Assembly: GCA_016748015.1 (NCBI GenBank)
Contig: JAAOMT010000303.1
Coordinates: 930,001-994,000 of the forward strand
Length of the DNA: 64,000 bases
Source: Geosiphon pyriformis uo1
Taxonomy: Eukaryota > Fungi > Glomeromycota
Reading direction: 5' to 3'
Made by a program: the position numbers and the translations under genes. Position 1 is the first letter of the stretch. Each line of letters starts with the position of its first letter. The notes below the pieces were generated by a model. The model did not search any database and was not told the DNA's origin. It saw nothing but the letters and a program-made list of their open reading frames with translations. Of this stretch, positions 14,766 through 41,095 are shown piece by piece.

Positions 14766-15344
14766 ATGGCAACAGTATCATCCTCATCACCTTTACCTTC
14801 TCATAATTCTAAAAGAACTTCGACAAATTCGAGTTCAAGAATGGAACTTGTTGAAAATTATCACAACTCGGAAGTTTCAACGCCTGAAAAAAATAAATCA
14901 TCTTCATCTAGTCCCACTTCAATTTTACGAAATCAAGAACGTTTATCAGTAGCTAGCATCTCGAATTTGATTAACCATCATGATGAATGGAAAAATCAAT
15001 CAATTTCAACACAATCTTCATCTTTATCTGAAAAAGTTATCGAGAAATTAAACAATAATGAACATAAAAAAAGAAAACAATCAGATATTCCTTCCCCTGA
15101 AGATTTTGCTGAACCAGTTCCTGATAGTTCAACAGCTGAAGCACTTCTCTCCTTATTCAAACGTCGACGTGTTTCGATATCAGAAAAAAATGGTGATGGT
15201 GATGACGATGACAATGTTAATGAAAAAAATCAAATTATTAATACTATTGCTAATGCTAATGTTAATCATAGTAACAAAAACATTAAGAATAATAAGAATA
15301 ATAACAATAATAGTATTAACAACAAAAACAAAAACAACAACAAC

Positions 15345-15375
<31 letters not shown>

Positions 15376-15400
15376 GTAATAACAAGATTCATTCTCGACT

Positions 15401-15445
<45 letters not shown>

Positions 15446-17215
15446 GGATGATAATGATGATGATCAAATGGAAACAGATGAACTTATTCACTCAACACAA
15501 CCATCTCCCGTTCCATCGACCGGATTCGATGACCCAAATCCTGTGGATGACCCACCTTTAGAAGTTATGTCGAAACCTACTCCTACTCCTACTACTGTTA
15601 CTGTTACTGCTACTACTAGTACTACAAAGATTTCAACGGCTCATTCAATCTTTGGTGGTAACGGTCATGGTGTTATCCTTCCTCCAAGCACATTTAGCGG
15701 TAAACAGTCACGGAATAAAAAGGCTTACGTTCCACGTCCCCCAAACTCCTTCATTCTTTATCGTCAACATCATCATCCATTGATCCTTAATCAACGTCCC
15801 GGAATCAATAATTCCGAAATCTCTCGAATAATCGCCGAACATTGGCGTAAATTAGGTGATCAGGAGAAATTAGAGTGGAAACGAAAGGCTGAGGAAGCTA
15901 AAGAACATCATATGAAAGTTTATCCCGATTACAAATATCAACCAAGACGACGAGCTGGTGCTCAGACCTCCAATTTTCGAAAAGCCGTTATTCCCTCCGC
16001 ACATGGTACATCACATGAAGATTCATCTGGGAAATATTTGGACAATTTTGTGATTGAGATGAAAGGCCCTCAACACCACCAACCACAACCATCGATAAAA
16101 CCACATAATCATCATAATCACAATCACCAGCATCAACATCATCATCATTCCATTCAACTCGACGAAGATCATGCCGTTCCAAGGACAGAAATGGAAGATT
16201 TAAGGATCTCGTCAACGAAATCTCAAAGATTTATTCGACAGGTGAACGATGTGGTCATCTTTGAAGGTGGTTCAACGGAATTGAAGAATATAGGTAAAAT
16301 TTCTAAATCTATTTAGAATTCTTGCTTCAAAATTGTCACCGATCAAATCTTTTTACCAATTCTTGAATTCTTTATCAAAATTAGCTCGTAATAAACCCAC
16401 CCCAACCGAGGCTCTCAAGGCTAGATTATTACCACGTACTACATCAGGACCAGCCGCATCATCATCTCATTCTCTACCTGCCCCGCCGTCCGCTTCCGCA
16501 TCCTCCTCGCAAAATTATTTTGTACATCCAACTCCCCCACCTCCATCCACTCCAACAACACCGAACCGGTTACCTTCACTAAATACCCTCATGCAATCAC
16601 CCCAACAACCTACACCAGTCTCTTCAACAATATCAGCTCCTCCATCTCCGGTTCATGGTTCGACAGCTCGTGGTGCAATGATTGTTCTGGAAGGATGTGA
16701 GGATGGTTCTTCTTCCTTACAAGCAAACAAATTGCTAGAATTCTTCAAGCAAGAAGGAATCACTGCAAAACTATGGAAATTTCCTGATCATTCCACACCT
16801 TCCGGTAACGCATTAAAAGCCTATCAACAATCAGATTGTCAACCACATCCGAAAACTCTTCATTTATTGATTGCATCTCATTGGTGGGAATTAATGTAAG
16901 TAATCTCGAATTGATTGTTTTTTTCTGAATCAAAATGTTTACCAATAAAATAACACATTTTTGAATTTTCCTTCCAGGCCAATCATGAAGGATCATCTTT
17001 TAAATGGAACCACGTTGATCGTTGATCGTTATGTTTATTCCGCGATTGCTGCTTCAGCAGCGGCAGGACTTGATCTGAATTGGTGTAAAGCCAGTTACGT
17101 GCATTTATTAAGTCCAGATCTTATATTCTTCTTGAATATTTCCGGACTTGAAAGGGATCAATCATCTCAGCACCAGCACCAACAACAACAGCACCACCAA
17201 CAACAGCAGCAACAA

Positions 17216-17246
<31 letters not shown>

Positions 17247-17760
17247 AACAGCAACAACAACAACAACAGCAACAGCAACAAATGCAGAGAATTTCACCTA
17301 CCACGGAGCCTACTTTTGATGATAATCGATCTTCGATTGAATGGCAACGAAGAATGCAGGACGCATTTGGAAGGCTGGCAGAAGTTCATTGGAAGGTAAG
17401 AACAATCTTGAGTCTTTTTGCTTTTGATGTTTCAAAATTTAAAATTTACACTTTTATTCTCTATACGAAAAGATTTTGGATGCGTGTGAATCAAATACCC
17501 TGGTTCACTTACAGATTGCCAAGGAATCAATAAAAGTGATTGAGCGTTGCCAAAATTGCAATACCAGTTACGGAACCAGTGGCAATAATAATATTCTACC
17601 AATCCATTATCCGAATATTGGTGGTGGTGGTGGTGACGAGAGCATGATTTCAAACAAACTAACAGGTCGTGTATCACAACATCAATCATCACAACAAAGG
17701 TTATCACTTCCGTTCGCACATCATGAAGAATACCCAAGACCTGTTCATGTACAGCTCTAG
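14766..17760 (+). CDS. MATA/SOX-type HMG-box transcription factor fused to a C-terminal degenerate thymidylate kinase (dTMP kinase) domain, ~914 aa; exons 14766-16293, 16385-16895, 16978-17395, 17473-17760
   Basis: HMG box VPRPPNSFILYR...ISRIIAEHWRKL...YPDYKYQPRRR (~15729-15953). TMPK-like RGAMIVLEG...KFPDHST...GTTLIVDRYVYS...LNWCK...PDLIFFL...WK|ILDA (16669-~17550). Three GT-AG introns (91, 82, 77 nt; phases 1, 2, 0) join the four ORF-track pieces into one 2745-nt open frame. Confidence 0.88.
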
Positions 17761-39465: not shown

Positions 39466-41095
39466 ATGGGTATGTAATATCAAATTGCGATACAAAAATT
39501 TTCAGATATCAGGGAATAAACATAATTTTGATTCTATTATGATTAGCTGCCAGTGTTAATGACTTCTTAGCAGGTACGTCTTCTATTTAAATTACCAGAA
39601 TGGGTACATTAATCAAATTGAAGCTTTTCTCCATATTTCTTTTAATTCAATTTTTTTTGATAACAGGATATGTGAGTGGTGTCGCCGGACTTCTGATTGG
39701 GAACCCTCTCGATGTTCTGAAGGTATTATTTTAAAGTTCTGTCGAATTGGGACTATCCTTCAGGTGTCTCCTCATGTGGAATCTGGGGATTTTGAGTGAT
39801 CTATAGGTTCGCCTCCAAACTCAAAAAAACCCCCATAATCCAAATGGAAGTGATATAATTGTTACACCACAATTAACAGGTTTAAGAAATTTGCGGCGCA
39901 TGGTACAAGTTGAAGGGGTAAAGATGGTTTTTGATCATTTATATATTCAGATGCAATTCTTGATTAAAAACTTAATCGGTATAAAGAAATTAATTTTAAA
40001 TGTAGCTGGGTTCAATGTTTAAAGGAGTAGCGTCTCCAATAATTGGACTCGCTTTCTTAAATTCCATATTATTTGTTTCATACGGGAATATCTTAAGGTT
40101 ACTTCAAGGTTTCGAGAAACCAGATTCAAAAAAAGGAAATACCCTAGTACCTTCGATGTTGAATGTTTACTGGGCAGGATTTGGAGCTGGTTTAGCGTGT
40201 TTTTTTGTGAGTACACCCACCGAATTAATCAAGTGTAAAACACAAGTTATTATCCCGTTGCCTATGTCATCACAAAATCAAAATAGAGATGCAAATAGTA
40301 GCAATGATTTTTCTTGGAATATATTCAAAGATGTGCTAAGACGGCAAGGAATTAGAGGTGAGAGAGGAAGGGAATTTTCTTTTGATAACTCAGTATAACA
40401 AAACAAAAATTTTAGGCCTTTATCATGGAGGATGTATAACTATTATGAGAGATACAATAAGTTATGGTGTTTATTTTTGGTAATTATCGGGGTCAGCAAA
40501 GAGTTTTTACTCTTTAATTTTTAAATAGCACCGAATTTTTTATATTCCCTCATAGGGCCTACGAAGGATTAAAACGAATATTAGGAGAGACATCAGATAG
40601 TTCAAATACTTCTATGGTCCTCAAAACTTTGTTTGCTGGAGGAATGGCAGGAGTTTTATCTTGGGTTAGTATATACCCATTAGGTAAGAAATTTCTCTAC
40701 CTAAACAAAAAACTAGTCTTTGGACCTGCAAACCTTAACTACTAAATTAAAATTCATTTTCAAAAAAATTAGATGTAATAAAAACTCGAATTCAAACAGA
40801 ATCAATCAGTACCAGTTCTACAAATTTCGTCGAAACTCACCGTTCTATTCGAACTTCTGTAAATTATTCCTCATCCTTTGATTCACATCACGTCCATTCC
40901 TTGTCAGATGACACTAGGCCATATTCAGGAATACTTGATTGTGCACTGAGATCATATAGAGCTGAAGGAATCACCGTATTTTGTAAAGGAATTGGACCAA
41001 CTGTGTTAAGAGCTTTGCCAGTGAGTGCGGTTACTTTTTATGTTTATGAGATTATGATGAATTGGTTAAAATCTGATCATGGCATAGTACCATGA
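39466..41095 (+). CDS. Mitochondrial carrier (SLC25) of the amino-acid/carnitine-acylcarnitine group, ~354 aa; exons 39466-39469, 39547-39573, 39667-39722, 39807-39917, 40006-40357, 40416-40479, 40556-40683, 40773-41095
   Basis: Three Px[DE]xxKx[RK] signatures: PLDVLKVRLQ, PTELIKCKTQ, PLDVIKTRIQ. EG..[FY][KH]G motifs present. The R-D pair (IMRDT) is typical of amino-acid-type carriers. Seven GT-AG introns give a 1065-nt open frame. Confidence 0.92.

What the first reader, a model, noticed from the sequence alone, without database searches (positions are those of the whole stretch)
14766..17760. HMG-box transcription factor fused to a catalytically dead thymidylate kinase domain
Seen: splicing three canonical introns yields one 914-aa frame joining a sequence-specific MATA/SOX-type HMG box, a Pro/Ser-rich linker and a complete eukaryotic-type dTMP-kinase fold. 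Established: Cdc8/DTYMK enzymes have the P-loop EGxDRxGK[ST]TQ; here it is EGCEDGSSSLQ (16690-16722), lacking the invariant Gly-Lys and the Asp-Arg pair. Thymine-pocket residues also differ: LLFSANRWE becomes LLIASHWWE and SGVAF/Y becomes SAIAA. KFP, DRY, WCK, PDL..FL and WK..DA are kept. Inference: this is an intact, selected pseudoenzyme domain on a DNA-bending regulator. Thymidylate kinases are homodimers, so it could dimerise the HMG box, bind the canonical enzyme, or sense an altered nucleotide ligand, linking nucleotide status to transcription. I know of no characterised protein with this architecture.
Basis: partly seen in the sequence, partly recalled or inferred. Interest (0 to 1): 0.92.

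Follow-up and report, generated by a model that had tools for sequence, protein, structure and literature searches.

The report
Mycorrhizal regulator with dead thymidylate kinase
Arbuscular mycorrhizal fungi of all five orders sampled carry a conserved DNA-binding regulator fused to a copy of a DNA-precursor enzyme that has lost its active site but kept its shape, probably as a protein-docking or pairing module, and we found no paper describing it.

Summary
Confirmed and strengthened. Four exons give one 914-aa frame. A public run of the same sample has contigs lacking all three introns exactly as modelled, and one contig joins the HMG box to the kinase-like exons. The fusion occurs in all five Glomeromycota orders sampled; in Paraglomus the HMG box and the first part of the kinase fold share one exon. 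It was not found outside them. The kinase-like domain folds like human TMPK (ortholog model, TM 0.81), shares two intron positions with the fungus group's own TMPK gene, and is under purifying selection (dN/dS 0.03-0.19). It keeps 0 of 16 conserved ligand/catalytic sites but 28 of 34 other conserved sites. P-loop indels, a variable DR arginine, a LID replaced by low-complexity sequence and a fixed Arg76-to-Trp argue against nucleotide sensing and for a protein-interaction module, most likely dimerising through the retained helix 3 (inferred, untested). Databases hold orthologs under automatic names, including a truncated MATA-HMG entry; no paper describing the architecture was found.

The parts
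14766..16293 (+). Exon 1: disordered N-terminus, HMG box, start of linker
   Evidence: RNA-type contigs
14955..14978 (+). Short motif SISNLINH, conserved from Paraglomus to Rhizophagus in otherwise unalignable sequence; candidate cofactor-docking motif (inference)
15732..15935 (+). Single SOX/MATA-type HMG box, 81-99% identical among AMF orthologs
16294..16384 (+). Intron 1 (phase 1, 91 nt); holds the in-frame stop at 16314-16316; same position in seven other AMF genomes, absent in Paraglomus
16385..16895 (+). Exon 2: Pro/Ser linker and first part of the TMPK-like domain (from 16669)
16690..16722 (+). Degenerate P-loop EGCEDGSSSLQ (no Asp-Arg, no Gly-Lys)
16852..16895 (+). Start of helix 3 (dimer helix in human TMPK); Phe72 to Ile, Asn75 to His, Arg76 to Trp (human numbering)
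16896..16977 (+). Intron 2 (phase 2, 82 nt); same position as in the canonical Diversispora TMPK gene
16978..17395 (+). Exon 3: DRY, DLxWCKxSY, PDL strand, insert, following helix
17138..17338 (+). 67-aa poly-Q/low-complexity insert replacing the catalytic LID (17-67 aa in orthologs)
17396..17472 (+). Intron 3 (phase 0, 77 nt); same position as in the canonical Diversispora TMPK gene
17473..17760 (+). Exon 4: last strand and helix of the TMPK fold, disordered tail, stop
17737..17757 (+). C-terminal motif RPVHVQL; the V-H/Q-V/I-Q-L end is conserved in Paraglomus, Rhizophagus, Glomus, Funneliformis, Acaulospora and Diversispora

Best explanation
This is a Glomeromycota-wide transcription factor. 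Before the AMF orders split, a DNA-level duplicate of the cell's own thymidylate kinase gene (CDC8) was joined behind a SOX/MATA-type HMG-box gene. The kinase copy lost ATP binding, dTMP binding and catalysis, changed quickly, then froze again under strong selection. It now works as a folded protein-interaction module, most likely pairing two copies of the regulator through the old helix-3 dimer face, so that two HMG boxes on long flexible linkers bind or bend paired DNA sites; short conserved motifs in the disordered parts would recruit cofactors. Shown: the gene structure, the spliced fusion, its spread, selection, predicted fold and loss of ligand residues. Inferred: loss of activity (from residues), dimerisation, DNA binding, cofactor docking.
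For: Spliced single contig across HMG and kinase exons. No intron between HMG and the first part of the kinase fold in Paraglomus. Orthologs in Archaeosporales, Paraglomerales, Entrophosporales, Diversisporales and Glomerales. Introns 2 and 3 match the canonical AMF gene. The 14 pseudo-domains form one clade (100/100) on a 1.05 subs/site stem, next to AMF canonical TMPKs (97/92). dN/dS 0.03-0.19 in pairs with dS below about 1.1. Ortholog model pLDDT 88.6, TM 0.81 to human TMPK. Ligand/catalytic sites kept 0/16, other conserved sites 28/34 (Fisher p 1.5e-8). Helix 3 is the dimer face of human TMPK and Pro81 is needed for it (PMC8679000); H69, L70, L71, A74, W77, E78 and P81 are invariant in all 14 orthologs. 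Entrophospora vs Diversisporales identity: pseudo-domain 80-83%, true enzyme 59%.
Against: No dimer was modelled or measured. Conservation is spread over the whole fold (0.80-0.96 per element; helix 3 0.86, not exceptional), so it does not single out the dimer face. Several newly fixed residues (H75, W76, S120-Y121, W at F156) could line a new pocket instead. The ligand/other split was partly assigned after seeing the alignment. The 83% vs 59% contrast rests on one comparison with an imperfect gene model.
Confidence: 0.55

Rival explanations
1. The dead domain is a ligand or phosphopeptide sensor: the remodelled pocket binds a new small molecule or a modified peptide and switches the HMG regulator, as the MAGUK guanylate-kinase domain does for phosphoproteins.
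For: Newly fixed residues lie at former pocket positions (D at R16, H75, W76), and EGxED, FPD.S/T-T-P and AHWWE are nearly invariant. Precedent for reuse of an NMP-kinase surface: PMC4718807, PMC3335814.
Against: The basic residues that bind phosphate (R16, K19, R45, R143) are gone and R97 varies among R/K/G/H. P-loop length varies by -1 to +2 residues and the LID is 17-67 aa of low-complexity sequence. Trp76 next to a shrunken Phe72 and Phe105 looks like a plug (inference).
Confidence: 0.22
2. The domain heterodimerises with the canonical thymidylate kinase, tethering or inhibiting the enzyme and linking dTTP supply to transcription in the multinucleate hyphae.
For: Helix 3 keeps 11 of 21 majority residues of canonical TMPKs. 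Both genes coexist in Entrophospora SA101. TMPK activity depends on dimerisation (PMC8679000).
Against: The pseudo-domain is more conserved than its would-be partner over the same split (80-83% vs 59%), and neighbouring helices carry fixed changes. A homodimer of the abundant enzyme would compete (inference).
Confidence: 0.13
3. The domain is still an enzyme with changed chemistry.
For: The fold is intact; Asp96 is invariant and Arg97 is kept in this genome.
Against: No Walker A lysine in any of 14 orthologs, no LID, 0/16 conserved ligand sites; below the dTMP kinase equivalog cut-off (60.6 vs 83.25 bits; canonical 124.2).
Confidence: 0.04
4. There is no real fusion: an HMG gene ending at 16316 sits beside a separate or decaying kinase-like gene, or the HMG-only form is the main product.
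For: Reading into intron 1 gives a stop at 16314-16316, and the same read-through frame is deposited for Rhizophagus (MATA-HMG, 404 aa, ANQ32280-84) and Gigaspora (477 aa).
Against: Run X2 has the spliced join and no contig in intron 1 (bin depth 17.5 = 36/117 x 56.8, exon share only). Paraglomus has no intron there. The 404-aa Logan contigs keep all three introns, so they are unspliced. Strong purifying selection.
Confidence: 0.03

Closest known systems
Eukaryotic thymidylate kinase (Cdc8/DTYMK; PF02223, TIGR00041)
   Same: Fold (TM 0.81 to 1e2f), core strands, helix 3, R5 and D128, two intron positions shared with the AMF gene.
   Different: No Walker A Gly-Lys, no D15-R16, R45, F72, R76, F105 or LID; fused to an HMG box; the canonical enzyme is a separate gene where it could be checked.
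SOX/MATA-type single-HMG-box transcription factors, including the expanded AMF MATA-HMG family
   Same: One sequence-specific-type HMG box; best single-box PDB matches are SOX4/11/9 and Capicua. The Rhizophagus exon-1 frame is deposited as MATA-HMG.
   Different: Box is 81-99% identical across all AMF orders, unlike a fast-diversifying expansion (own knowledge), and carries a C-terminal pseudo-TMPK domain. No mating role was tested.
MAGUK guanylate-kinase protein-interaction domain (PMC4718807, PMC3335814)
   Same: A nucleoside-monophosphate kinase duplicated, fused into a multidomain protein and kept without its old catalysis.
   Different: Other parent enzyme, fungal, on a DNA-binding protein; MAGUK reuses the GMP site for phosphoproteins, whereas here the phosphate-binding basic residues are lost.
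Enzyme-fold regulators such as Gal3, Gal80, Ure2 and the dNK-fold complex I subunit NDUFA10 (own knowledge, not checked here)
   Same: Enzyme fold reused for regulation or scaffolding.
   Different: Those are separate proteins, and some still bind ligand; none is a TMPK fold fused to a DNA-binding domain.

Membership tests
Thymidylate kinase (active dTMP kinase) | TMPK fold | tested here: met
   Ortholog model pLDDT 88.6; Foldseek E 6e-16, TM 0.81 to human TMPK
Thymidylate kinase (active dTMP kinase) | Walker A P-loop with Gly-Lys-Ser/Thr | tested here: not met
   Lys absent in 14 of 14; indels in the loop
Thymidylate kinase (active dTMP kinase) | Thymine-binding Phe72 and Arg76 | tested here: not met
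   Phe72 is I/V/S/T; Arg76 is Trp in 14 of 14; roles from PMC8679000
Thymidylate kinase (active dTMP kinase) | DR(Y/H/F) motif arginine | tested here: inconclusive
   Kept in the window; G in Ambispora, K in Gigasporaceae, H in Paraglomus
Thymidylate kinase (active dTMP kinase) | LID segment (R143...ERYE) | tested here: not met
   Replaced by a 17-67 aa low-complexity insert
Thymidylate kinase (active dTMP kinase) | TIGR00041 equivalog cut-off | tested here: not met
   Orthologs 60.3-60.6 bits vs cut-off 83.25; canonical 124.2
Thymidylate kinase (active dTMP kinase) | Catalytic activity; homodimer | not testable with these tools
   Needs assay or a complex model
SOX/MATA-type HMG transcription factor | Single HMG box above Pfam cut-off, closest to sequence-specific boxes | tested here: met
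   73.8 bits vs 25.4; SOX4/SOX11/SOX9/Capicua ahead of HMGB1
SOX/MATA-type HMG transcription factor | Binds (A/T)ACAA(A/T)-type sites and bends DNA | not testable with these tools
   Inferred from family only
Mating-type (MAT/sex locus) HMG gene | Allelic divergence or conserved MAT-locus neighbours | tested here: inconclusive
   Neighbours differ among genera (Nup98-96 in Ambispora, GMC oxidoreductase in Funneliformis, PP2C/MutS in Entrophospora); Rhizophagus copies near-identical. Suggests not a MAT gene; no direct test
Pseudoenzyme domain | Catalytic residues lost while frame and fold stay under purifying selection | tested here: met
MAGUK GK-type interaction domain | Derived from guanylate kinase within PDZ-SH3-GK | tested here: not met
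   Derived from TMPK; only HMG and TMPK domains found. An analogy only

The most novel reading that the evidence does not exclude
A phylum-defining AMF regulator in which a thymidylate kinase fold was rebuilt into a sensor or into a binder of the real enzyme, so that dTTP supply or another metabolite directly sets transcription or nuclear cycling in the shared cytoplasm of these symbionts.
Probability: 0.25. Interest if true: 0.88.

Novelty: new variant of a known kind. Interest (0 to 1): 0.72.

Why it matters
AMF have over 100 HMG-box genes whose roles are mostly unknown (PMC4771724). This one stands out as conserved in every order sampled and carries a domain not found outside the group, so it is a strong candidate core regulator and a marker of what arose at the origin of these plant symbionts. 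It would also be, to my knowledge, the first thymidylate-kinase-derived interaction domain, an independent parallel to the MAGUK case. Databases mislabel it as a kinase or cut it to an HMG-only protein.

Tried and rejected
Two separate genes or a prediction artefact: rejected. Retrocopy as the source of the spliced contigs: unlikely, as DNA run X1 has no joints and X2 has no intron-bearing contig. Decaying pseudogene: rejected by dN/dS and intact frames in 10 genomes. Logan contigs of the 404-aa Rhizophagus protein as an intron-retention isoform: they keep all three introns, so they say nothing on isoforms. Origin from the Entrophospora enzyme specifically: the tree puts it sister to the pseudo clade, but holding the two AMF enzymes together is not rejected (p-AU 0.22); probably long-branch pull. 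Synteny: flanking tblastx gave only noise. Full-length structure of the Paraglomus ortholog: two folded domains, disordered linkers, pTM 0.38, no sign that the short motifs fold onto either domain, but the alignment was shallow. Atlas searches gave nothing beyond HMG and TMPK. Metagenome scan gave two more loci, both AMF-like. Paper searches for HMG with thymidylate kinase, and thymidylate kinase with mycorrhizal, found no description; subscription papers such as the MATA-HMG surveys are not in the library.

Full report
Observation. Searched exon by exon, exon 1 holds an HMG box (E 1.6e-20) and exons 2 and 3 hold the two halves of a thymidylate kinase domain, each matching human and yeast TMPK in the PDB. 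The degenerate P-loop is at 16690-16722. It was assembled by coordinates only inside local scripts, for the frame check, alignment, dN/dS and tree. Structures were predicted from orthologs.

The fusion is transcribed. Run X2, from the same sample as genome run X1, has contigs that skip exactly 91, 82 and 77 nt at the predicted GT..AG sites. One contig runs 15469-16290, 16382-16895 and 16978-17163 with no mismatch, so it joins the HMG box to the kinase-like exons. X2 is labelled 'DNA?' by guess, but it has no contig in the introns (depth in the intron 1 and 2 bins equals the exon share only), while X1 keeps the introns and shows no joints; X2 is therefore best read as RNA. Limits: one sample, contigs only, rare isoforms would be dropped, and the start codon region is on a separate contig across a repeat.

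It is old and widespread in one group. A full-library search with the exon-2 piece gave eight hits at 64-86% identity, then ordinary TMPKs at 44% or less. The six named hits are all Glomeromycota. Length-limited searches added Rhizophagus, Funneliformis, Dentiscutata, Cetraspora, Racocetra, Acaulospora, a second Ambispora and Paraglomus, mostly with both Pfam domains on one protein. That covers all five orders sampled, which by general knowledge split over 400 million years ago. Nothing outside the group appeared; the full-library search has no length limit but shows only 50% cluster representatives, and the other searches are length-limited, so absence is likely but not proven. The window's domain is sister to Ambispora (97/98) but is neither Ambispora species (75-79% identity, saturated dS): an archaeosporalean fungus, possibly Geosiphon (inference).

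Gene anatomy points to the origin. Intron 1 is at the same place and phase in seven other AMF genomes and absent in Paraglomus, where HMG box, linker and first part of the kinase fold are one exon. Introns 2 and 3 sit at the same codons and phases as two of the four introns of the canonical Diversispora TMPK gene, which indicates a DNA-level duplicate of the lineage's own gene. In a tree of 44 domains the 14 pseudo-domains are one clade (100/100) on a stem of 1.05 changes per site with mostly short branches after it, next to the two AMF enzymes (97/92). No Mortierella or Mucorales enzymes were identified in the tree, so the date is bounded only as 'before the AMF orders split'. Canonical copies were seen in Diversispora epigaea and in Entrophospora, which has both genes; this genome's own CDC8 could not be checked.

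It is selected but not an enzyme. Pairwise dN/dS on the domain core is 0.03 (Racocetra-Gigaspora), 0.12 (Rhizophagus-Funneliformis) and 0.19 (two Ambispora); deeper pairs have saturated dS with dN 0.1-0.3. The Ambispora domain models at pLDDT 88.6 and matches human TMPK at TM 0.81. Using the Diversispora-human alignment for numbering, D15, R16, G18, K19, R45, F72, N75, R76, G102, F105 and the LID are changed in all or nearly all orthologs. Of 50 sites at least 90% conserved in 30 canonical enzymes, 0 of 16 ligand or catalytic sites are kept, against 28 of 34 others (p 1.5e-8; the split uses PMC8679000 and my own knowledge and was partly made after viewing the alignment). The P-loop varies in length, Arg97 is G, K or H in three lineages, and the LID is a 17-67 aa low-complexity stretch. 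Orthologs score below the dTMP kinase cut-off.

How it most likely works. What is kept is the core sheet, the R5 and D128 pair, and helix 3 with H69, L70, L71, A74, W77, E78 and P81 invariant. In human TMPK helix 3 forms the dimer interface, the P81 kink is needed for it, and F72 and R76 on that helix hold thymine (PMC8679000). Here those two residues have changed while the rest stayed. Between Entrophospora and Diversisporales the dead domain is 80-83% identical and the enzyme 59% (one comparison), which suggests a tightly constrained surface. The full-length Paraglomus model has two folded domains on disordered linkers, and those linkers keep short motifs (SISNLINH, NFxxE, xIIxxGxKEL, RLP, C-terminal VHVQL). 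The simplest reading is a sequence-specific HMG factor (closest solved boxes SOX and Capicua) whose dead kinase fold pairs subunits or docks a partner (0.55). A new ligand or phosphopeptide pocket (0.22) and a heterodimer with the real enzyme (0.13) remain open, because conservation covers the whole fold rather than one face.

Comparison and novelty. It fails membership of active thymidylate kinases and fits the pseudoenzyme pattern. The nearest precedent is the MAGUK guanylate-kinase domain (PMC4718807), an analogy and not kinship. Orthologs are already in public databases with both Pfam domains computed, under names such as 'bifunctional thymidylate/uridylate kinase', 'HMG box domain-containing protein' and, for the intron-1 read-through frame, 'MATA-HMG'. 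No paper in the held library describes the fusion or the loss of the active site; the library lacks most subscription papers. The scan's notes on this genome did not contain it. Verdict: real, expressed, conserved across AMF, a new variant of a known kind; interest 0.72, with the mechanism still inferred.

Noticed in passing
window:14690-14730: A short run of telomere-like CCCTAA/CCCTAC units about 40 nt before the start codon.
   Followed up: no
   Followed up: no
window:16248-16283 (linker motif before intron 1): The conserved linker motif of the form xIIxxGxKEL looks like the strand-1/P-loop start of the kinase fold (LIVLEG); may be chance.
   Followed up: partly
L013:9466-9612: The Funneliformis geosporum gene model removes the degenerate P-loop as a 147-nt 'intron' that is open in frame and encodes RGALIVLEGCE: an annotation error.
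   Followed up: yes
L003 and L004, 3' of the gene: Both Ambispora models (1007 and 1157 aa) continue into many further exons, probably a merged downstream gene; their true C-termini were not determined.
   Followed up: no
L011, L012, L016; L015: Intron 2 is absent in Acaulospora, Racocetra and Gigaspora; intron 1 is absent in Paraglomus.
   Followed up: yes
P0176-P0180, P0184: The canonical Entrophospora TMPK has P-loop EGCDGSGKSTQ, without the arginine usual in eukaryotic enzymes.
   Followed up: no
P0009: A Volvox carteri model holds two tandem TMPK domains, both with intact P-loops.
   Followed up: no
window:23053-24513 (-): Intronless ORF of near-identical Sel1-like repeats (one search hits are Sel1/TPR proteins below cut-off).
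   Followed up: partly
window:26999-28873: Broken frames that look like a LINE-type reverse transcriptase/RNase H remnant (by eye).
   Followed up: no
window:36474-38153 and 40006-41092: A 559-aa low-complexity exon with no NCBIfam hit, and exons that look like a mitochondrial carrier gene (by eye).
   Followed up: no
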